55,323 nucleotides of DNA, taken from Octopus sinensis (lineage: Eukaryota). The stretch covers positions 1 to 55,323 of the forward strand of contig NW_021833829.1 in NCBI RefSeq assembly GCF_006345805.1. Direction: 5' to 3'. The notes under the pieces are model-generated. The model was not told the origin of the DNA. It ran no database searches and worked only from the letters and a program-made list of their open reading frames with translations. Made by a program: the position numbers and the translations under genes. The first letter of the stretch is position 1. Every line of letters begins with the position of its first letter. This document shows positions 2,695-48,045 of the stretch, one piece after another.

Positions 2695-3275
2695 AAAGGC
2701 GGCGAGCTGGCAGAATCGTTAGCACGTCGGGCGAAATGCTTAGCGGTATTTCGGCTGCCGTTACGTTGTGAGTTCAAATTCCGCCGAGGTCGACTTTGCC
2801 TTTCATCCTTTCGGGGTCGATAAATTAAGTACCAGTTAAGCACTGGGGTCGATATAATCGACTTAATAACTATGTCTGTCCATGTTTGTCCCCTCTATGT
2901 TTAGCCCCTTGTGGGTAATAATGAAATAGGTTTTCGTATGTCTTTACGTTCTGAGTTCAAATTCTGCCGAGGTCGACTTTGCCTTTCATCCTTTCGGGGT
3001 CGATAAATTAAGTACCAGTTGCGTACTGGGGTCGATCTAATCGACTGGCCTCTTCCGTCCAAATTTCGGGCCTTGTAACTAGAGTGGAAAATGATATTAC
3101 CGCGCCGGCAAAAATTTCCCCTTTTAATGTTCTGAATTGAAATTCCGCAGAAGTCTACTTAGCCGTTCATCCTATCCGGCTCGATAAATTAAGTACCAGT
3201 TACACATTGGAGAAGATGTAATCGACTAGGAACCTCCCTGCCAAATTTCAGGCCTTGTGCCTATAGTTGAAAAGT
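2695..3275 (+). mobile_element. SINE family A, multimeric copy (three internal units)
   Basis: A tRNA-like head with B box (gttcaaattcc) is followed by repeated gtcgactttgcctttcatcctttcggggtcgataaattaagtaccagtt units at ~2790, ~2975 and (diverged) ~3155. Confidence 0.85.
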
Positions 3276-11969: not shown

Positions 11970-12214
<245 letters not shown>

Positions 12215-13450
12215 ATTAGATGACAAAAAGAATGGTTTATAACAGGTATCTTACTGGTAAAGCACAGTCACTTTCACAGTGTTCTTTATGTATTTTGTTA
12301 ATGAGAAACCTGGCAGAATCGCTACTGCACCGGACAGGACGTTTGGCGGCATTTCTTCCCTCTCTCGTTAAACAAATATATATATAAATATGTATATTTA
12401 TGCTAATTTTCCTTGGGTTCATTGTTTCACGATCATTCCTGAATACATTAAACAACATTCTAAGTCCTCATTGATATCCACCATTGTACCTACCAGTCTC
12501 TATCTACAAGCCTTGATACTTCACTATGCATAAATACATACAAATACAAGAATATATGTGTCTCTAACGACCGAAAACCTACATAACTGCATCGGTATAT
12601 CTATATATTCCTGTCTACATTATTTGTGGGAGCAGAAAGAAAAAAAGCAGATTTATGCGAAATCAGGTCGAATTAATTTCTACTGCAAAACTTTCAAATA
12701 CAGCTTTGGAAGAATGTACGTCCGTTATTAACGGCATATGTGTGCACACACATACAAACACATATATACACCCATACATCACCAAGCAGTACCTTCCTTC
12801 CAGAATAAATGCTTAAAAGCACATTCATCTACACAAACACACAACACACGTGTGTGTGTGTGTGTTAAAGTGAATATGCACTGTTAGTCGTTGAAGTGTA
12901 AAAGATATACCAACGAAAGTGATCGTTATATAGAATAACGATGCCTTTTCACTCCAACATTTTTATATTCTGAAGACATTGAGCTCGCAGAATCCTTACT
13001 TTGCCGGGCAAAATACTTAACGTATTTTCTTCCGACTTTATGTTCTGATTCAACTTTACATTTCACCCTTTCGGAATCGTCAATATAAGTACCAGTTGCA
13101 CACTGCGACTGATGTACACTTACCCTGAAACTGCTGGCCTCGTCTCGAAATTTGAAACCAATATTCAAATATTCTTCAATAAAACATATATATATATACA
13201 TATATACAATAGATGTAAAACATTTGAAGCTCGAAGAATTGAACAATATGTCTTGAAACGAGCACTTCGTAGACAGGACGTAACTACAATCCCAGACACT
13301 TCTCTGTTTAAAAATATTTGTAAGATCTGCAATAGAGTTTCTTTGTCAAGAGCACAACTTACTAGCTAGTCATATAAGATCTCATGACAGTATTTAGCAA
13401 CTGAAAAATGGTCTTCTTCTGTAAGGAAGTGGCAATCATCATTATCATCT

Positions 13451-13739: not shown

Positions 13740-13880
13740 TATATTTCTTTATTGCCCACAAGGGGCTAAATATAGAGAGGACAAACAAGGACAGACAAAG
13801 GGATTAAGTCGATTACATCGACCTCAGTGCGAAACTGGTACTTTTATTTATCGACCCCGAAAGGTTGAAAGGCAAACATC
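13740..13880 (-). mobile_element. SINE family A 3' part
   Basis: tttctttattgcccacaaggggctaaa...gacaaacaaggacagac...gtcgattacatcgacc...tttattatcgaccccgaaagg. Confidence 0.75.
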
Positions 13881-15790: not shown

Positions 15791-15828
<38 letters not shown>

Positions 15829-15883
15829 CATTATTGGTGAATTGAAGAAATGGAGCTGAACGCAGATTGAACAGAAATCGTTT

Positions 15884-15977
15884 TATTTCATTCTACACGT
15901 GTTTCGAAAGGCACAAATTACCAAAATCCGATTGAATAATGGGACCATATTGTGTCTTTCTCTTCAGGAAGAAAATA
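15884..15977 (-). ncRNA. Minimal type I hammerhead ribozyme (intact core)
   Basis: UAUUUUCUUC-CUGAAGA-GAAAGACACAA...UUGUGCCUUUC-GAAA-C(ACGU)G-UA|GAAUGAAAUA. Helix I ~10 bp with one mismatch, helix II 10 of 11 pairs, palindromic helix III, GUA cleavage triplet. Confidence 0.85.
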
Positions 15978-16050
15978 GGAAATCCGTTGGAAAAACAAAA
16001 ACAGAACAGAGGCGGAGCAAAAACACATCGAACTATGCTCCTAAGAGCCC

Positions 16051-17083
16051 GACCCATCACACTGATAGGAATAAGCATATATGGTTTGTAATCCCCTTTG
16101 GTAAGCAGATTAGAACTAACCTCCCCCTCATGTTTAGACAAGCCATCGCCAATAACTTCCCCAGAAACTCCAAATATTACTCCACAGTTAACTCGCATAA
16201 AGTTAGGATAGCTTTCTCCAACACTAAAAACCTCGCCCAGATAATCGCCTCCCATAATAATAGGCTACTTACTAAGACCCTATCACCTTTTTCCGGAGGC
16301 ACAGCCTCTTCCGCTCCCGGTTTAATGCTCAGTAGGAATAGTTATAGTAGTAATAATGATATGAGAGCCAGTACAGTGACACATAATCTCAGCTCCAGCC
16401 AGGGAGTACCCACTAGGGGTATAGTTATAAATAGGGGTGTTGTGGTTGACGGTAACAATGGGAGTAGGGTAGAGAGCCCCAATAGCATCCCCAGCATCAT
16501 TTCCCGCAATAGCAGCACCACGGGCAGTAGCAATGACAGCACTCTGATAGATAGTGGAGAATCAGGGGTTATTCCTATAGTTAATAGTGACGTAGTGGAA
16601 AATAGAGTAGTAAGCGGCTGCAGGTCTCGGAACGAATATAGTGACAGGAACGCAGTTCTAATTTCAGAAACTAATCCTAGCAGAATAAGATTCACGTCGG
16701 CGAACTCCAAGATCAAAAACGCCGTCTACCAATGCAAGGTTTACACGGACACAGATGTCTTCACTTATGTAGGGGCCTCATCCTCAAGATTGTCTTTGCG
16801 TGTCTCCAACCATTACGCAACTTTTCGGGACGTGAACAAGCGCCAGACCACGGGACTCAGTAAGCTAATATGGCGACTGAAGGATACGAACTTAAGCTAT
16901 AGGCTGCAATGGTCAATTTTGTCGGTGGCCCTCCCATTTGATAGGGGCAGAAGGCAGTGCAACCTTTGTGTCTCCGAACTCTTCCATATTTTGTTTGCCA
17001 GAGGCCGGATGGTAAACGGGCTTTTACAGTCGGCTTTTCGATGCCCCCATTGGCGGCGCTACACTTATCTGGCTTTTAAATAG
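16051..17083 (+). CDS. Penelope-like element ORF C-terminus: RT thumb region plus GIY-YIG endonuclease (the RT core is missing)
   Basis: IWFVIPF...KVRIAFSNTKNLAQIIASHNNRLL (thumb). NAVYQC...YVG...RVSNH...TTGLSKLIW...CNLCVSE...VN...RCPH is a GIY-YIG of the WFNPP / CxLCxxE / CRH type, which from memory is the Naiad group. The frame is open from 15899, but codons before 16051 come from the inverted terminus. Confidence 0.85.
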
Positions 17084-17673
17084 CGTTTATAAATAATACC
17101 GGCACCCATAGCCCTTGGTAACAAATTCTGAAATAGCCTTTAAGATATCTACGATTAGCCACTGCAAGGGGAATTACTCCTGTAAGACAAACGGCGCTTG
17201 GTTTTTTCACAGCGGGGGGTTTCCTTGACAAGGCAGGCTTAGATGAACACACACACACATAAAACATAATATATATATATATTTTTTTCTGCCACCCAAC
17301 GGTTCTGACGGCAGTAGCCACTGACAGCCGAACGATCAAACGCACACATGTACACAAAAAATGTTTTCTACCCCTACGCCAACACACATATATAGAACAG
17401 TATACACACACACACACACGTCTCTAAGTAGATTTTTTCTCGCCCCTTATCAAACATCCAATATTCCTTAAATAGTCAGAACTTTATTCTCGGTCACAAA
17501 GAACACCTACACACCCTCACCCACATGATTGACCGATGCCTGACCCGTTAAATTCTTCAGCCACCGGTTCTCAACATACACTGATAAACAGTTTCGCCAT
17601 GGGCTCTTAGGAGCATAGTTCGATTTGTTTTTGCTCTGCCTCTGTTCTGTTTTTGTTTTTCCAACGGATTTCC

Positions 17674-17767
17674 TATTTTCTTCCTCAAGAGAAAGACACA
17701 ATATGGTCCCATTATTCAATCGGATTTTGGTAATTTGTGCCTTTCGAAACACGTGTAGAATGAAATA
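17674..17767 (+). ncRNA. Hammerhead ribozyme copy with a G5C core mutation (probably inactive)
   Basis: Same sequence as 15884-15977 but CUCAAGA at 17684-17690 instead of CUGAAGA. Confidence 0.75.
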
Positions 17768-17972
17768 AAACGATTTCTGTTCAATCTGCGTTCAGCTCCA
17801 TTTCTTCAATTCACCAATAATGTTTTAATTTCAATTATCCGCAACAACGCACGGTTGCAACACCATATGGTTGTACCTCCAACCGTGCTGTTTACTGCTG
17901 TGATTTTTGCTACTAAGGTATCGGTAAACTTTTGATTAATCTACTACAAGATTATTCATCTTTCTATTTCAC

Positions 17973-18010
<38 letters not shown>

Positions 18011-19989: not shown

Positions 19990-20040
<51 letters not shown>

Positions 20041-20112
20041 AATAGTTTAGAAAGAGCATTTCAATAGACGCACATGGGTCTATTAATATGGTCTTCCCAT
20101 AATTAACAGGAA

Positions 20113-20184
20113 TCTTACTGAAGAGCCAGCCTGAGTAAATAATATTATTTTTATTACTGAATTTGGCGAAACTGCAGTATAAGA
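20113..20184 (+). ncRNA. Minimal type I hammerhead ribozyme, copy 1
   Basis: UCUUA-CUGAAGA-GCCA...UGGC-GAAA-C(UGCA)G-UA|UAAGA. All core nucleotides are present, helix I 5 bp, helix II at least 4 bp, palindromic CUGCAG helix III. Predicted cut after 20179. Confidence 0.9.
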
Positions 20185-20516
20185 AAAGCTAAGTTTGTAA
20201 AAGATTTTAATTTTCATCTCACTAAATTTATCCAGCTTTTGTGTATCTAGTGCACACTTCGCCTTGAATGTAATTTATATATGAATAATATATGGCGTGT
20301 ACTGGTACACCGGCGATTATAATTAATTTTATTGTATCGCATTTAACTTTGTTTACATATTCTCTCGATAAATTTCTGAGCGTTAGACGATATACCACAA
20401 TCCCCTATTTTGTCGGGTATGTTCTGAGTCTGCGCAGTGTTTTGAATAGTTTAGAAAGAGCATTTCAATAGACGCACATGGGTCTATTAATATGGTCTTC
20501 CCACAATTAACAGGAA

Positions 20517-20589
20517 TCTTACTGAAGAGCCAGCCTGAGTAAATAAATATTATTTTTATTACTGAATTTGGCGAAACTGCAGTATAAGA
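20517..20589 (+). ncRNA. Minimal type I hammerhead ribozyme, copy 2
   Basis: Identical core and helices to copy 1. Predicted cut after 20584. Confidence 0.9.
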
Positions 20590-20758
20590 AAAGCTAAGTT
20601 TGTAAAAGTTTTAAATTTTCATCTCACTAAATTTATCCAGCTTTTGTGTATCTAGTGCACACTTCGCCTTGAATGTAATTTATATATGAATAATATATGG
20701 CGTGTACTGGTACACCGGCGATTATAATTAATTTTATTGTATCGCATTTAACTTTGTT

Positions 20759-20811
<53 letters not shown>

Positions 20812-22661: not shown

Positions 22662-23806
22662 TGAATGTCTTCATGTATAGAAAATGAAAAGAATTTGTGG
22701 AAGTATCAAGCAATATATAGTTTTCTATTGTGTATATTTAAACAAATTTTGCAGCTTGGAATAAATTTTGGTTAAAAATTGATAAAACGTCTGCGAATAA
22801 GTCAGAAATATGGTGATAAATATATTTGCCAGAATATTCAGAATCTTTGTAAAGTAAGAGTTATTTATAAATTATATGAATGATTTGTTAATGAGTAATA
22901 ACTTGACGTTCGGTAAAGAAAGAGACTTATAGGAAATATTAAACAGAACTTTCGTCAATAAATCCTTTGCTTGGGGAAATGATTTCGTATCATCAAGTTC
23001 CGTTTAAGAGAATAAATATCATTAACTCAACTTTTTAAAATTTCCTGACCAAATGTTAAACATATAAACCTGGAAAAGAATGCATTAATCAAACCACTCT
23101 AAAATTAAAGAACATGAAGCCTAAATGTTAATTAAATATGAGTAAGAATAGAAATACATCTTATTCTACTTACAAGGAGGAAAATGGGACGAGTCTCCTG
23201 AAGAACCGTTTTACGGATTGTTGACTACTCCTCGGGGACATATATATCTTCCTGTCCCAATCAATAGCACAGATCAATTGATTATAAAATAGTCATGAAT
23301 TAGGCTAGTAAATAGGGTTCAGCCTAAAATATTGATAAAGGTGACCTGTCATTAAGACGATTCTAGATTTTAGCTGCCATTTTGTGAAAACCGAAGACAA
23401 CAGTTTCCTAACAGTTGTGTGTAACGGAAAATCAAGTATTGGTACGAAAGATATTTCGTTGGCAGATAGTGTACAGCAAACACTAAAGCAAAGGATTCCA
23501 GGAGAACATGTATTCAGCTGTTAGAGTAAATTCTTCTGTCACTCACTATTTACTATCAATTTGAATTTTGTTTATGAAGGAAAACACCCTAATTTAGTAT
23601 TTAAGTGTCAGGTGAAAGTGAAACTTAGATGAAGTGAGTAGGTTAGCAACGTATGAACTTGTTTTGATCACATAGGTGTGTAAATGGGTATAAGTGCGCG
23701 CTCGTATGAAATTAAGTAATTTTATTATATGTGAGCGTATACAATGAACATTTAAATATATAGAATACAGAGAGCTACAAATATATATATATAAATATAT
23801 ATATAC

Positions 23807-25591
23807 GCGAGAAAGAAGCAACAAGAATGGATAGGTTTTTAGTACGATCGTTTCATACAAGGACAGGTTTTATTAAAAGTTGCAAAGATTACAGCATATA
23901 AACGAGTCCCCTCATTCATCTAGCTAAATACATGTAAGTTCTCTAAGACATCCTAGTGTTTGAGGCTATACTCATGAAGTAATGTAGATAATTAAGTAAC
24001 ATAAACAGATTTCTAAAGTTCATTAAAGTTCTTTAAAGATGATGTACAGTCTTATCACAGAATTTTAAAAAAGTTTTGATAGCATCACAGAGAAGGTGAC
24101 CTAATCCATATGAATTTCCATAGATATGATGAGGATTTATATACCCACAGAAGACAAATTTATCCATTGTTAATTACAACAACGAGTGGGTCTCAATTCC
24201 TGCTTATTAGCATTACAGAGAGGGTGAATTAATCCTTTGATAGAGATGCACAGATTCCAATGGTGTAGAGATGTAATTTCCAGAGAAATGGAGATGAATT
24301 TCATATTCACAGGCGATAATTTTTTGAATGGTTGAACACAATGAGGTAGGTATCAATCCTTGTTATATGATTAGGATATTTGCCACATTAATCACATTAC
24401 TGCTATTCACAAGAGGCTGTAGCTATTTAACTCTCTAAAGGCTGAAGGGCTTTCTAGATCGCCAAGAATAGAGAAGGGAATAGACAACTCCTAAGACAAT
24501 AAAATGAATAAATTAAATAAGTAATTTTTAATGACTTTTTGATAAGATTATGCTTAGATTTTCCTAATGTATTTTCTGGTGATTTTAGCATCTGACCCCT
24601 TAACCCTGACTGTGTTATCTTCTTTAGATTCTCTTTAAACTCATAGCTGATTTCAACAGCAATAAATTAACGTTTACTGGTCAAAGAATAATATTCTCCT
24701 CTAGTTCCTAGATGCCTGTTGATTAAAACCAGACTTGCAGTCTACTAACTCTTCTGTATAACTAGAACCCTCTTTTTTTTTCTTTTCTTTTTTTCCCTTC
24801 TGTCCCTATTTCTTTCTCTTTTTCTCTTTTTCTTTTTTCTTCTTCTTATTCTCTGTTTCCTTTTCTCTTCTCTTTTAGTCCCCCCCCCCTTTTGCTCCCT
24901 CCTCCATTATTTTCTATCTCTTTTCTTCTATTCCCTTCTCTATTCTTGGCCGATCTAGAAAGCCCTTCAGCCTTTAAGAGTTAAATAGCTACAGCCTCTT
25001 GTGAATAGCAGTAATGTGATTAATGTGGCAAATACCTAATCATATAACAAGGATTGATACCTACCTCATTGTGTTCAACCATTCAAAAATTTATCGCCTG
25101 TGAATATGAAATTCATCTCCATTTCTCTGGAATTTACATCTACACCATTGGAATCTGTGCATCTATACAAAGGATTAATTCACCCCTCTGTAATGCTAAT
25201 AAGCAGGAATTGAGACCCACCTCGTTGTAATTAACAATGGATAAATTTGTCTTCTGTGGGTATATAATCCCTCATCATATCTATGGAATTCATATGGATT
25301 AGGTCACCTTCTCTGTGATGCTATCAAAACTTTTTAAAATTCTGTGATAAGACTGTACATCATCTTTAAGAACTTTAATGAACTTTAGAAATCTGTTTAT
25401 GTTACTTAATTATCTACATTACTTCATGAGTATAGCCTCAAACACTAGGATGTCTAGAGAACTTACATGTATTTTAGCTGATGAGTACGGGACTCGTTAT
25501 ATGCTGTAATCTTTGCACTTTTAATAAAACCTGTCCTTGTATGAAACGATCGTACTAAAAACCTATCCATTCTTGTTGCTTCTTTTCTCGC
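23807..25591. repeat. Large inverted repeat (arms 23807-24484 and 24927-25591; spacer 442 bp)
   Basis: The arms are reverse complements along their length, differing mostly by small indels. Confidence 0.9.
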
Positions 25592-25709
25592 TTATAATCA
25601 CCCCACATTACTGTATTGTTAATCAGTATAGTTTTTTTTTTGGTGCATCTAAGTTAGGTACCATATTCAAGTAAATTCATTTAAATTAACTTGAATCTTT
25701 ATTGCTCTT

Positions 25710-25780
<71 letters not shown>

Positions 25781-25800
25781 GCTCACACACACACACATCT

Positions 25801-26180
25801 ATAACAGGCTGCTGCACTTATTTCTACCTCTCCAACACCACCACCTCACAGGCACCCATCTTCGTCTCTATCATATAATTAAATCCTTTAACGGGACGTC
25901 TAGTAACGACATTTACTGTATCTCCTGCATTTTCTAGCCCTTCTCTGTACACTGGTCAAATGGGACGCCACTTGGCTGATCGGCTCGCGGAGCACCTCCG
26001 AGACATCAAACCTGGCAATGACACCCCGCTCTCGCGCCATTTCCGTTCTACCGGTCATACACTTGTTAGTGTTCGGATTGTCTTTGCACAACGACCATCC
26101 GGTCTTTCGCATTCGCTGTGAACAGGAAATTAATCTTCTCTCTTCACACCATTGCGCCACATGCGCTCAAATCCTCTCCT
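25801..26180 (+). pseudogene. Penelope-like (Neptune-type) GIY-YIG endonuclease relic
   Basis: Across frameshifts: CCTYFYLSNTTT...KSFNGTSSNDIYCISC...LYTGQMGRHLADRLAEHLRDI...DTPLSRHF...EQELIFSLHTIAPHAL. The clade assignment is from memory of the E..LIF.L.T..P.GLN motif. Confidence 0.8.
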
Positions 26181-26813: not shown

Positions 26814-26868
<55 letters not shown>

Positions 26869-26957: not shown

Positions 26958-26962
<5 letters not shown>

Positions 26963-27194
26963 TTGTTTTGTTTTGTTTTTTTCCAGTTTCAGCTCTTGAG
27001 CTGTGGCCATGCTGGGGCACTGCCATTGTGGTGAAAGAGTACAGCAGGGTTCACCACCCCCTGCCGGAGCCTCGTAGAGCTTTTAGGTGTTTTTTCGCTC
27101 AATAAACACACACAACGCCCGGTCTGAGAATCGAAACCGCGATCCTGCGACCGCGAGTCCGCTGCCCTAACCACTAGGCCATTGCGCCTCCACA
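26958..27194 (-). mobile_element. Chimeric SINE: family B head and body plus family D 3' tail plus (AAAAC)n
   Basis: The family B head runs to ctttcaccacaa, then tggcagtgccccagcatggccacagctcaagagctgaaactgg, which resembles the family D end. Confidence 0.75.
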
Positions 27195-27249
27195 CAATAT
27201 ATATATATATATATAATATATATATATATTATATATATATATATATTAT

Positions 27250-27363
<114 letters not shown>

Positions 27364-27402
27364 CATATATATATAACTACATATATGTGTGTGTATGTGT
27401 GT

Positions 27403-27715
27403 GTAAAGGTGTAATGGCTCAGTAGTTAGGGCAGCGGACTCGCGGTCGTAGGATCGCGCTTTCGATTCCCAGACTAGCCGTTGTGAGTTTTATTGAGCGA
27501 AAACGCCTAAAGTTCTACGAGGCTCCGGCAGGGGGTGGTGGCGATCCCTGTTGTAATCTTTCGCTACAACTTTCTCTCACTCTTTCTTCTGTTGGCCGGC
27601 TCCATTAGCCAGCGGGGTGGCGTCATTAGAAGGCTAAAACAAAGCGAAGCGCATTGTAACCCACGATGTATAGCAACATCTGATAGCCTAGTCGGTCACG
27701 ATGATGACAGTGATG
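27403..27715 (+). mobile_element. SINE family B with a distinct 3' tail
   Basis: ggtgtaatggctcagtagttagggcagcggactcgcggtcgtaggatcgcg...actttctctcactctttcttc, then a tail ending gtcggtcacgatgatgacag. Confidence 0.75.
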
Positions 27716-27750
27716 TTATATATATATAATATATATATATATATATAATA

Positions 27751-27805
<55 letters not shown>

Positions 27806-27833
27806 GTGTACTGTATGTATATAATACATAGAT

Positions 27834-27907
<74 letters not shown>

Positions 27908-28139
27908 TTGTTTTGTTTTTGTTTTTCCAGTTTCAGCTCTTGAGCTGTGGCCATGCTGGGGCACTGCCATTGTGGTGAAAGAGTACAGCAGGGGATCACC
28001 ACCCCCTGCCGGAGCCTCGTAGAGCTTTTAGGTGTTTTTTCGCTCAATAAACACACACAACGCCCGGTCTGAGAATCGAAACCGCGATCCTGCGACCGCG
28101 AGTCCGCTGCCCTAACCACTAGGCCATTGCGCCTCCAAC

Positions 28140-28259
<120 letters not shown>

Positions 28260-28719
28260 TATATATTAATATATATATATATATATATATATAATATACT
28301 ATATATATAACTACATATATGTGTGTGTATGTGTGTGTAAAGGTGTAATGGCTCAGTAGTTAGGGCAGCGGACTCGCGGTCGTAGGATCGCGCTTTCGAT
28401 TCCCAGACTAGCCGTTGTGAGTTTTATTGAGCGAAAACGCCTAAAGTTCTACGAGGCTCCGGCAGGGGGTGGTGGCGATCCCTGTTGTAATCTTTCGCTA
28501 CAACTTCTCTCACTCTTTCTTTGTTGGCCGGCTCCTTAGCCAGCGGGGGGCGTCATTAGAAGGCTTAAAACAAAGCCGAAAGCGATTGATAGCCTAGTCC
28601 ACGATGTTTATGTGCCAACATCTGATTTAAGAAATAGTCGCTGTCACGATGATGACAGTGATGTAGATTATTATGATATGCCGAAGATATAATATATATA
28701 ATAATCATATATAAATAAG

Positions 28720-30227: not shown

Positions 30228-30615
30228 AAGAAAGTGGTGAGCTTGGCAGAAACGTTAGCACGCCGGGCGAATGCTTAGCGCTATTTCGTCTGCGGTAAGT
30301 TCTGATTTCAAATTCAACCGAGGTCGACTTTGCTTTCATCCTTTCGGGGTCGATTAAATAAGTATCAGTTACGCACTCGGGTCGATATAATCGACTATCC
30401 GTTTGTCTGTCCTTGTTTATCCCTTTGTGTGTAGCCTTGTGGGCAGTAAAGAAGTAGGTTTCGTCTGTCTTCGTGTTCTGAGTTTCAAATTCCGCCAAGA
30501 TCGACTTTGCTTTTCATCCTTTCGGGGTCGATAAACTAAGTATCAGTCACGTATTGGGGTCGATCTGGCCCCATTCCCAAAAGTGTCGGGCCTTGTGCCT
30601 AGATTAGAAAAGAAA
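30228..30615 (+). mobile_element. SINE family A, dimeric copy
   Basis: Head plus two core units joined at gtgggcagtaaagaagtaggtttcgtc. Confidence 0.8.
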
Positions 30616-44439: not shown

Positions 44440-44799
44440 TGTTTAAGTCGATTATATCGACCCCAGTGCGTAACTGGTACTTATTTAATCGACTCCGAAA
44501 GAATGAAAGGCAAAGTCGACCTCGGTGGATTTTTTAACTCAGAACGTAACGGCAGACGAAATACCTATTTCTTTACTACCCACAAGAGGCTAAACATAGA
44601 GGGGACAAACAAGGACAGACATAGGTATTAAGTCGATTACATCGACTCCAGTGTGTAACTGGTACTTAATTTATCGACCCCGAAAGGATGAAAGGCAAAG
44701 TCGACCTCGGCGGAATTTGAACTCAGAACATAACGACAGACGAAATACCACTAAGTATTTTGCCCGGCGTGCTAACGATCCTTCCAGTTCGCCGCCTTA
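44440..44799 (-). mobile_element. SINE family A, dimeric copy
   Basis: Two core units and the head (ends gttcgccgcctta on the + strand). Confidence 0.88.
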
Positions 44800-47619: not shown

Positions 47620-48045
47620 ATAAGGCGGCGAACTGGCAGAAACGTTAGCACGCCGGGCGAAATGCGTATCCGTATTTCGTCTGCCGCTACGTTCTGAGTT
47701 CAAATTCCACCGAGGTTCACTTTGCCTTTCATCCTTTCGGTGTCGATTAAATAAGTACCAGTTACGCACTGGAGTCGATATAATCGACTTAATCCGTTTG
47801 TCTGTCCTTGTTTGTCCCCTCTGTGTTTAGCCCCTTGTGGGTAGTAAAGAAATAGGTATTTCGTTTGCCGTTACGTTCTAAGTTCAAATTCCACCGAGGT
47901 CGACTTTGCCTTTCATCCTTTAGGGGTCGATAAATTAAGTACGAGTTACGCACTGGGGTCGATGTAATCGACTTAATCCGTTTGTCTGTCCTTGTTTGAC
48001 TCCCTCTATGTTTAGCCCCTTGTGGGTAATAAAGAAATAAGAAAC
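47620..48045 (+). mobile_element. SINE family A, dimeric, low divergence
   Basis: Head plus two nearly identical ~175-bp units joined at gtgggtagtaaagaaataggtatttcg. Confidence 0.9.

What the first reader, a model, noticed from the sequence alone, without database searches (positions are those of the whole stretch)
20037..20759. Tandem intact hammerhead ribozymes defining a 405-nt retrozyme-like RNA
Seen: two near-identical direct repeats inside (TA)n, each with a perfect minimal type I hammerhead (UCUUA-CUGAAGA-GCCA...UGGC-GAAA-CUGCAG-UA|UAAGA). The predicted cuts after 20179 and 20584 are 405 nt apart. Established: minimal hammerheads with a palindromic helix III cleave efficiently as dimers, and tandem hammerhead repeats (non-LTR retrozymes) in some animals yield small circular RNAs thought to be mobilised by Penelope-like elements. 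Inference: one transcript supplies both halves of the dimer and excises a monomer (20180-20584) that could circularise. This would be a non-autonomous, PLE-dependent circRNA element in a cephalopod. I cannot tell from the sequence whether this family has been described.
Basis: partly seen in the sequence, partly recalled or inferred. Interest (0 to 1): 0.92.

Follow-up and report, generated by a model that had tools for sequence, protein, structure and literature searches.

The report
Octopus mini-retroelement with twin hammerhead ribozymes
A 722-base insert in a (TA)n microsatellite of an octopus-type genome holds 1.8 tandem copies of a 405-base non-coding unit, each with an intact hammerhead ribozyme motif; it is a new example of a known kind of element (Penelope-type "retrozyme"), not a new kind.

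Summary
Window 20037-20759 is 1.78 head-to-tail copies of a ~405-nt unit, with 4 differences in 319 aligned columns. It sits between (TA)22 and (TA)24. Each copy has a complete type I hammerhead: UCUUA-CUGAAGA-helix II-GAAA-CUGCAG-UA|UAAGA. The predicted cuts fall after 20179 and 20584, 405 nt apart.

The motif is not chance. A strict descriptor found none in 300 dinucleotide shuffles. Rfam Hammerhead_1 aligns end to end, but at 21.3 bits against a threshold of 34.

Helix III (ACUGCAGU) is palindromic, and co-folding the two copies gives the 8-bp double-hammerhead helix.

The window carries two more, unrelated hammerhead elements in Penelope-style inverted arrangements at (TA)n. It also carries a decayed Penelope-type GIY-YIG endonuclease remnant. 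Repeats shared with Octopus sinensis support a cephalopod origin.

Best reading: a non-autonomous, Penelope-dependent mini-element (non-LTR retrozyme in the broad sense), inserted as a more-than-unit-length copy.

Not shown: cleavage, circular RNA, copy number, or an autonomous partner. No second copy was found in any data I could reach. The cephalopod genome itself was not searchable.

This is a new member of a known kind, of moderate to low interest.

The parts
19993..20036 (.). (TA)22 microsatellite, left flank of the insertion (target)
   Evidence: TRF; sequence
20037..20440 (+). Unit 1 of the tandem (404 nt), complete
   Evidence: Alignment; repeat families D8 and D11
20441..20759 (+). 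Unit 2, partial (319 nt). It ends in a 4-6-nt ATAT microhomology with the (TA)n target: unit ACATAT versus junction GTATAT.
   Evidence: (blastn alignment runs on to 20765)
20113..20184 (+). Hammerhead copy 1: helix I 20113-17/20180-84, core 20118-24 and 20168-71, helix II 20125-29/20163-67 with a long AU-rich extension, helix III ACUGCAGU 20171-78. Predicted cut after A20179.
   Evidence: Rfam RF00163 21.3 bits end to end
20517..20589 (+). Hammerhead copy 2, identical apart from one extra A in loop 2. Predicted cut after A20584.
20180..20584 (+). Predicted excised monomer, 405 nt, 33% G+C. No ORF longer than 60 codons. Circular fold -86.5 kcal/mol, z = -2.2 against shuffles.
20355..20440 (+). 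86-nt segment present only once, between the two copies. Its existence argues against a simple false duplication in the assembly.
   Evidence: alignment
20761..20808 (.). (TA)24 microsatellite, right flank of the insertion (target)
   Evidence: TRF

Best explanation
The 722-bp insert is a retrotransposition product of a short (~405 nt), non-coding, hammerhead-bearing element of the Penelope-like-element (PLE) world. That is a non-LTR retrozyme in the broad sense, or equivalently a non-autonomous PLE derivative. Shown: the tandem, the intact motifs, the (TA)n flanks and the PLE context in the same window. Inferred mechanism: a transcript spanning both copies folds so that the two palindromic helix III strands (ACUGCAGU) pair with each other into a double hammerhead. 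[quoted passage not shown] A GIY-YIG endonuclease plus reverse transcriptase of an autonomous PLE nicks a (TA)n microsatellite. The nicked end anneals to an AUAU stretch of the RNA, and reverse transcription runs for more than one unit length, either round a circle or by template jumping on linear RNA. That gives the 1.78-unit copy seen here. This more-than-unit form is also what carries two ribozymes and so stays competent for the next round.
For: Tandem of 1.78 units with 4 differences, none in the core or helices. Complete hammerhead core and three helices in both copies. 0 of 300 shuffled windows give any such motif. Rfam Hammerhead_1 aligns end to end, sub-threshold. Co-folding the two ribozyme segments gives an MFE of -35.3 kcal/mol with the 8-bp intermolecular helix III, against -15.0 and -15.4 for the monomers alone. 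The helix III duplex alone is -13.1 kcal/mol. The single-motif hammerhead fold is disfavoured, -8.1 against an MFE of -14.3, as expected for dimer-dependent motifs. The insert is flush with (TA)n on both sides, and the 3' junction has ATAT microhomology. (TA)n is the reported preferred target of Neptune and Naiad PLEs, and partial tandems and inverted copies are their hallmark (PMC8557442). Within 5 kb on either side the window holds two unrelated hammerhead elements with 8-nt palindromic helix III, both ending in (TA)n and both with an inverted 5'-truncated partner. It also holds a decayed endonuclease fragment whose library relatives carry RVT_1 plus a C-terminal GIY-YIG domain. Unit size and 33% G+C fit non-LTR retrozymes (PMC7229834). 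A 2026 preprint derives vertebrate retrozymes from PLE pseudo-LTRs (10.64898/2026.07.22.740005).
Against: Only one locus was seen. There is no other copy in the window, in 21 kb of Octopus sinensis, in the viral, metagenome or prokaryote-genome collections, or at ORF level in the protein collection. None of these covers cephalopod genomes properly, so copy number is unknown. The motif misses Rfam's gathering score. There are no loop1-loop2 contacts, and loop 2 is unusually long at 37 nt. Minimal PLE hammerheads were weakly active in vitro (PMC4209133). The MFE of the whole 722-nt transcript folds neither motif into its active form, although the in-cis double hammerhead is a pseudoknot that this method cannot represent. 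The 405-nt circle is only modestly structured (z = -2.2, 63% paired), less than the 'highly self-paired' circles described for retrozymes. No autonomous PLE with a matching terminus was found.
Confidence: 0.7

Rival explanations
1. This is an ordinary PLE-style partial tandem made from a linear RNA, with no circular RNA involved. A 404-nt linear non-autonomous element (order 20355-20440, then 20441-20759) was inserted as a 5'-truncated copy followed by a full copy through template jumping. The hammerheads only trim read-through transcripts, or do nothing.
For: The layout is exactly that of a truncated copy plus a full copy ('pseudo-LTR'), described as typical for PLEs (PMC8557442, PMC4209133). 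The neighbouring hammerhead elements show inverted rather than tandem partners, which a rolling circle does not explain. Minimal PLE hammerheads have low activity in vitro (PMC4209133). The monomer circle is only modestly structured.
Against: Both ribozyme copies are intact while 4 changes accumulated elsewhere, though with so few changes this is weak. A 405-nt spacing of two dimer-competent motifs is the arrangement that yields circles in tested retrozymes (PMC7229834).
Confidence: 0.18
2. A DNA-level tandem duplication (slippage or unequal exchange) of a solitary 5'-truncated PLE 3' end. The second ribozyme is a by-product, and there is no short mobile element.
For: Only one locus is known. 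The region is full of microsatellites that favour slippage.
Against: Both ends of the whole A-B-C-A-B structure are flush with (TA)n. No (TA)n lies between the copies, which exchange between the flanks would leave. One duplication step of an internal segment does not give this layout.
Confidence: 0.08
3. An assembly artefact (false duplication), or a chance motif in AT-rich DNA.
For: Microsatellite-rich regions are hard to assemble, and only 1.78 copies are present.
Against: The copies differ at 4 positions. An 86-nt segment occurs only between them, and there is no gap of Ns. The motif is absent from 300 shuffles and is aligned end to end by Rfam's type I model. Two other independent motifs of the same special type lie nearby.
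Confidence: 0.04

Closest known systems
Metazoan non-LTR retrozymes (Cervera & de la Pena 2020, PMC7229834; review PMC7761336)
   Same: Short non-coding tandem repeat (reported 150-450 bp) of low G+C. There is one type I hammerhead per unit, at least two in tandem, and a weak palindromic helix III that favours dimeric cleavage. PLEs are the proposed helpers.
   Different: The described retrozymes carry canonical motifs with loop1-loop2 tertiary contacts and a short loop 2. They occur as many copies, up to long arrays, and give abundant, highly self-paired circles. Here the motif is minimal with a 37-nt loop 2, only 1.78 units at one locus are known, and no RNA data exist. The characterised mollusc was a mussel. 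I found no paper in the searchable library that holds both 'retrozyme' and a cephalopod term.
[quoted passage not shown] 2017, cited from memory and via PMC7761336)
   Same: Helix I of 5 bp without loop 1. G10.1-C11.1 pair. Palindromic 15.2-16.2 plus loop 3. Tandem pair of motifs. Predicted action as a dimer. Widespread as dispersed non-coding copies.
   Different: In PLEs the two motifs are ~3 kb apart and flank an RT-endonuclease ORF. Here they are 405 nt apart with no ORF. The usual unpaired base between positions 9 and 10.1 is absent.
Xenopus retrozymes derived from PLE pseudo-LTRs (Li, Clavereau & Pollet, bioRxiv 2026, 10.64898/2026.07.22.740005)
   Same: [quoted passage not shown] Consensus lengths 51-972 bp. 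Interpreted as non-autonomous PLE derivatives.
   Different: That is a vertebrate survey. Homology between retrozyme and PLE terminus was shown there but could not be tested here. Their TRF-based pipeline might miss a 1.78-copy array, and TRF did not report it here.
Newt/salamander satellite 2 and the double-hammerhead (Epstein & Gall 1987; Forster et al. 1988; cited via PMC7229834 and PMC4209133)
   Same: ~330-nt tandem units. Helix III is too weak for single-motif cleavage, and there is efficient cleavage only when two motifs pair through helix III.
   Different: Those are huge arrays with canonical loops, in a vertebrate host.

Membership tests
Hammerhead ribozyme, type I | Conserved core C3U4G5A6N7G8A9 ... 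G12A13A14 ... A15.1-U16.1, H17 at the cleavage site | tested here: met
   CTGAAGA 20118-24, GAAA 20168-71, T20178, A20179. The same in copy 2.
Hammerhead ribozyme, type I | Three helices around the core with helix I open (5' and 3' ends in helix I) | tested here: met
   Helix I 5 bp, helix II 5 bp plus an extension, helix III 2 bp plus a UGCA loop. 0 of 300 shuffles match.
Hammerhead ribozyme, type I | Reaches Rfam RF00163 gathering score (34 bits) | tested here: not met
   21.3 bits, full-length alignment, E=0.0028 in a 101-nt search. No hit in wider searches. The cause is a 37-nt loop 2.
Hammerhead ribozyme, type I | Self-cleavage at the predicted site | not testable with these tools
   Needs in vitro transcription.
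PLE-type minimal hammerhead (PMC4209133) | Short helix I (4-5 bp) without defined loop 1. Palindromic 15.2-16.2 and loop 3. G10.1-C11.1. | tested here: met
   UCUUA/UAAGA; ACUGCAGU; G20125-C20167. Co-fold gives the intermolecular helix III.
PLE-type minimal hammerhead (PMC4209133) | [quoted passage not shown] | tested here: not met
   No bulge. Helix II has 5 contiguous pairs, then an interior loop and an AU-rich extension.
PLE-type minimal hammerhead (PMC4209133) | Lies in the flanking repeats of an element that encodes RT plus GIY-YIG endonuclease | tested here: not met
   No ORF over 60 codons between the motifs, and no protein relatives. A PLE-type endonuclease remnant lies 5 kb away at 25879-26118 but is unrelated in DNA sequence.
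Non-LTR retrozyme (PMC7229834; operational definition in 10.64898/2026.07.22.740005) | At least two consecutive tandem units, each with a complete type I hammerhead. Unit of a few hundred bp, G+C below 45-50%, with no ORF, LTR, PBS or PPT. | tested here: met
   Two complete motifs 405 nt apart, 33% G+C, non-coding. LTR, PBS and PPT were not searched for specifically.
Non-LTR retrozyme (PMC7229834) | Canonical hammerhead with loop1-loop2 tertiary interaction | tested here: not met
   No closing stem or loop 1 beyond the 5-bp helix I. Loop 2 is a 37-nt hairpin extension.
Non-LTR retrozyme (PMC7229834) | Dispersed multi-copy family in the genome | tested here: inconclusive
   One locus in 55 kb, and none in 21 kb of O. 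sinensis. No cephalopod genome can be searched with these tools.
Non-LTR retrozyme (PMC7229834) | Expressed as a small circular RNA | not testable with these tools
   No RNA data are reachable.
PLE-mediated insertion (PMC8557442) | Partial tandem or inverted arrangement, and insertion into a microsatellite, (TA)n for Neptune/Naiad | tested here: met
   1.78-unit tandem flush between (TA)22 and (TA)24.

The most novel reading that the evidence does not exclude
This locus is a live member of a cephalopod retrozyme family. In that family a minimal, Penelope-type hammerhead, rather than a canonical one, works as an in-cis double hammerhead to release a 405-nt circular RNA, which a (TA)n-targeting Penelope element copies by rolling circle. 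That would be the first cephalopod retrozyme. It would also be a direct invertebrate bridge between PLE pseudo-LTR ribozymes and circle-forming retrozymes.
Probability: 0.25. Interest if true: 0.55.

Novelty: new member of a known kind. Interest (0 to 1): 0.35.

Why it matters
Hammerhead-bearing tandem repeats and Penelope-like elements are already linked in the literature. The general mechanism (self-cleavage, circularisation, more-than-unit reverse transcription) has been proposed, and parts of it have been shown in corals, mussels and salamanders. What this locus adds is modest. It is a clean, young-looking example in an octopod, a group for which I found no retrozyme description. Here a minimal PLE-type ribozyme sits in a 405-nt direct tandem inside the (TA)n target typical of some PLE clades. 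If the family proves to be multi-copy and expressed, it would support the recent view that animal retrozymes are simply non-autonomous PLE derivatives. It would also give a small, tractable substrate for testing whether minimal PLE hammerheads really cleave in vivo.

Tried and rejected
- **Rfam, wide searches.** Nothing at gathering threshold on the whole window, and nothing at E<=10 on 1 kb; only AT-rich microRNA noise appeared. Only a 101-nt search exposed the sub-threshold Hammerhead_1 match. The second motif at 25478 is not recognised at all.
- **Exact-pattern scans for the ribozyme.** Viral contigs, metagenome contigs and prokaryotic genome contigs gave 0 hits.
- **Relaxed metagenome pattern.** It gave 120+ hits. 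Only 2 of the 80 loci held passed even a relaxed hammerhead descriptor, and both were 61-62% G+C prokaryotic DNA. I treated these as chance or unrelated matches.
- **Looking for other copies through proteins.** Exact look-up of the 59-aa and 56-aa ORFs found nothing. A search with all stop-free segments of the element joined together also found nothing.
- **Word-indexed homology search with the endonuclease fragment.** No candidates, and Pfam gave nothing on it. The exhaustive representative search did work.
- **Folding the whole 722-nt transcript.** The MFE shows neither active motif. The in-cis double hammerhead is a pseudoknot, so this is not informative.
- **SINE or tRNA origin.** No tRNA and no B box.
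- **Bacterial promoter/terminator scan.** Irrelevant for an animal genome.
- **Synteny with O. sinensis, to look for an empty site.** The only retrievable locus is a paralogous transposon copy, not the orthologous region.
- **BLASTP of the 394-aa ORF against two PLE proteins.** Not significant.

Full report
**1. What is there**

Window 20037-20759 (+) consists of a complete 404-nt unit (20037-20440) followed by the first 319 nt of a second copy (20441-20759). The copies differ at four places: 20100 T / 20504 C, a 1-nt indel at 20140 / 20545, 20204 A / 20609 T and 20208 T / 20613 A. The insert is flush against (TA)22 on the left (19993-20036) and (TA)24 on the right (20761-20808). An 86-nt segment (20355-20440) occurs only once, between the copies. 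There is no run of N. The layout A-B-C-A-B is therefore not that of a simple false duplication.

At the 3' end the unit would continue ACATAT, where the locus reads GTATAT. The junction thus lies in a short ATAT microhomology with the target.

**2. The ribozyme motif**

Each copy reads UCUUA / CUGAAGA / GCCAG...(33 nt)...UUGGC / GAAA / CUGCAG / U A | UAAGA. All invariant hammerhead core positions are present. So are the G10.1-C11.1 pair, the A15.1-U16.1 pair and a GUA cleavage triplet. The predicted cuts fall after A20179 and A20584, 405 nt apart.

- A strict descriptor (helix I >=5 bp, helix II >=4 bp, helix III >=2 bp) found three motifs in the window. Two of them are independent, and all are on the + strand. 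It found none in 300 dinucleotide-preserving shuffles scanned on both strands.
- Rfam finds nothing at its gathering threshold, or at E<=10 over 1 kb.
- In a 101-nt search, the type I model RF00163 aligns to 20112-20185 over its full length (1-45/45) at 21.3 bits, against a gathering score of 34, with E=0.0028. The loss comes from a 37-nt insertion where the model expects an 8-nt loop 2.

The motif is real but atypical. It has a 5-bp helix I with no loop 1, a long AU-rich helix II extension, and a helix III of two pairs closed by UGCA.

**3. Monomer versus dimer**

- Alone, the motif prefers other folds: -14.3 kcal/mol MFE against -8.1 for the hammerhead fold.
- ACUGCAGU is an 8-nt palindrome.
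- Co-folding the two ribozyme segments gives an MFE of -35.3 kcal/mol. In it both helix II hairpins form, and the two helix III strands pair with each other. The separate monomers give -15.0 and -15.4.
- The 8-bp duplex alone is worth -13.1 kcal/mol.

This is the classical double-hammerhead arrangement. Within one transcript it is a pseudoknot, so the MFE of the whole 722-nt RNA cannot show it and does not.

The 405-nt monomer is 33% G+C. It has no ORF over 60 codons. As a circle it folds to -86.5 kcal/mol, with z = -2.2 and 63% of bases paired.

**4. Surroundings**

The window is littered with (TA)n runs. It holds two further, unrelated hammerhead elements.

(a) The second element:
- 23802-24484 (-) and 24927-25596 (+) form a 95.8% identical inverted repeat. 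It lies between a degenerate (TA)n at about 23780-23806 and (TA)27 at 25714-25767.
- The right arm carries an intact minimal motif at 25478-25554: UUUUAG/CUGAUGA/.../GAAA/CGAUCG/UA|CUAAAA, with helix III palindrome ACGAUCGU.
- The left-arm copy has a broken core.
- Neither arm codes for anything.

(b) The third element:
- A 2.15-kb element spans 15825-17976, between two (TA)15 runs.
- It has a motif with palindrome ACACGUGU twice. The + copy near 17680-17760 has a core mutated to CUCAAGA. An inverted, 5'-truncated copy at 15894-15967 (-) has an intact core.
- The O. sinensis relative keeps the palindrome through a double change (ACAUAUGU) and changes the distal helix II on both strands.

Just after the (TA)27, 25879-26118 encodes a decayed fragment (...YTGQMGRHLADRLAEHLRDI...). 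Its relatives in the representative library include proteins with RVT_1 followed by a C-terminal GIY-YIG domain, which is the Penelope architecture.

Tandem or inverted partial copies and (TA)n targeting are described hallmarks of endonuclease-bearing PLEs (PMC8557442).

None of these neighbours shares DNA similarity with the 405-nt unit.

**5. Host**

The only homologue of the 394-aa ORF at 15899-17083 is an Octopus sinensis protein, at 52% identity. The O. sinensis locus that encodes it shares several ~230-bp interspersed repeats with the window, at 84-93% identity. A cephalopod origin, probably octopod, is therefore supported.

**6. Mechanism**

Shown:
- two intact, dimer-competent hammerheads 405 nt apart in a 1.78-unit tandem;
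- the tandem lies inside a (TA)n;
- the genome and the neighbourhood carry Penelope-type relics.

Inferred:
- a read-through or internal transcript is cut at both sites by a double hammerhead;
- the 405-nt product may be ligated into a circle;
- a PLE endonuclease and reverse transcriptase nicks (TA)n, primes on an AUAU stretch and copies more than one unit.

The main rival keeps the same players but uses a linear 404-nt RNA and template jumping. That is the ordinary way of explaining PLE pseudo-LTRs. The inverted partners of the neighbouring elements fit that view better than a rolling circle.

A DNA-level duplication is unlikely. The whole A-B-C-A-B block is flush with (TA)n and has none inside it.

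**7. Comparison with what is known**

The locus meets the operational definition of an 'active' non-LTR retrozyme: at least two consecutive units, each with a complete canonical or minimal type I hammerhead (10.64898/2026.07.22.740005). It also meets the size and composition criteria of PMC7229834.

It fails the canonical-motif criterion, because there are no loop1-loop2 contacts. Whether it is a dispersed family or makes circles could not be tested.

The ribozyme itself matches the minimal PLE type of PMC4209133 in helix I length, the G10.1-C11.1 pair and the palindromic helix III. It lacks the usual bulge before helix II, and it does not flank a coding region.

It is best filed as a non-autonomous, PLE-derived mini-element. 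The 2026 preprint argues that this is what animal retrozymes are.

In the searchable library, the searches pairing hammerhead ribozymes or Penelope elements with cephalopod terms returned two relevant papers, a PLE survey (PMC8557442) and the giant squid genome paper. The latter only lists 235 Rfam Hammerhead_1 loci (PMC6962438). The search for 'retrozyme' together with cephalopod terms listed no paper that holds both.

**8. Limits**

No tool here searches cephalopod genomes or transcriptomes. Scans of the viral, metagenome and prokaryote collections were empty or gave chance hits. So were protein-level searches for other copies. Copy number, activity, circles and the helper element remain open.

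**Verdict**

This is a new member of a known kind, of moderate to low interest.

Noticed in passing
window 23802-24484 (-) and 24927-25596 (+); motif at 25478-25554: A 95.8% identical inverted repeat with a ~440-nt spacer lies between a degenerate (TA)n and (TA)27. The right arm has an intact minimal hammerhead (helix III palindrome ACGAUCGU, G-U at 10.1-11.1). The left-arm copy has a disrupted core (CTAGATGAATGA). Neither arm is coding. It looks like a Penelope-style inverted insertion of a second, unrelated family.
   Followed up: partly
window 15825-17976; motifs at 15894-15967 (-) and about 17680-17760 (+); L001 about 12170-12260: A 2.15-kb element lies between two (TA)15 runs, with a 394-aa ORF (15899-17083). 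The ORF's C-terminus resembles a GIY-YIG motif by eye (VYQCKV..YVGASSSRL..R..H), but it has no Pfam hit and no significant BLASTP match to PLE endonucleases. The 3' region holds a hammerhead-like motif with a mutated core (CTCAAGA). An inverted truncated copy at the 5' end has an intact core but only a 3-bp helix I. The O. sinensis copy (annotated 'myb-like protein I') keeps the helix III palindrome by a double change (ACACGUGU to ACAUAUGU).
   Followed up: partly
window 25879-26118 (+): A decayed, frameshifted endonuclease fragment starts right after (TA)27. It has 70 relatives at E<=0.001 in the representative library, several of them with RVT_1 plus a C-terminal GIY-YIG domain. It is therefore a 5'-truncated Penelope-like element. 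No hammerhead was detected downstream of it, before the next (TA)n at 26820.
   Followed up: partly
window 2696-2933, 13742-13876, 30230-30457, 44565-44798, 47622-47857 and others: A ~230-bp interspersed repeat is shared with Octopus sinensis chromosome record CM016882.1 at 84-93% identity. It is probably an octopod SINE and was used here only to place the window taxonomically.
   Followed up: no
window 26962-28506: Two copies of a ~934-945-bp tandem repeat (families D9, D10, D12; 93-100% identical), interleaved with long (TA)n and (TG)n runs. Its nature is unknown.
   Followed up: no
window, whole: There is a very high density of (TA)n runs: 55 runs of 8 or more units in 55 kb. Flanking by (TA)n alone is therefore weak evidence of targeting. 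The argument rests on inserts being flush with the runs at both ends.
   Followed up: yes
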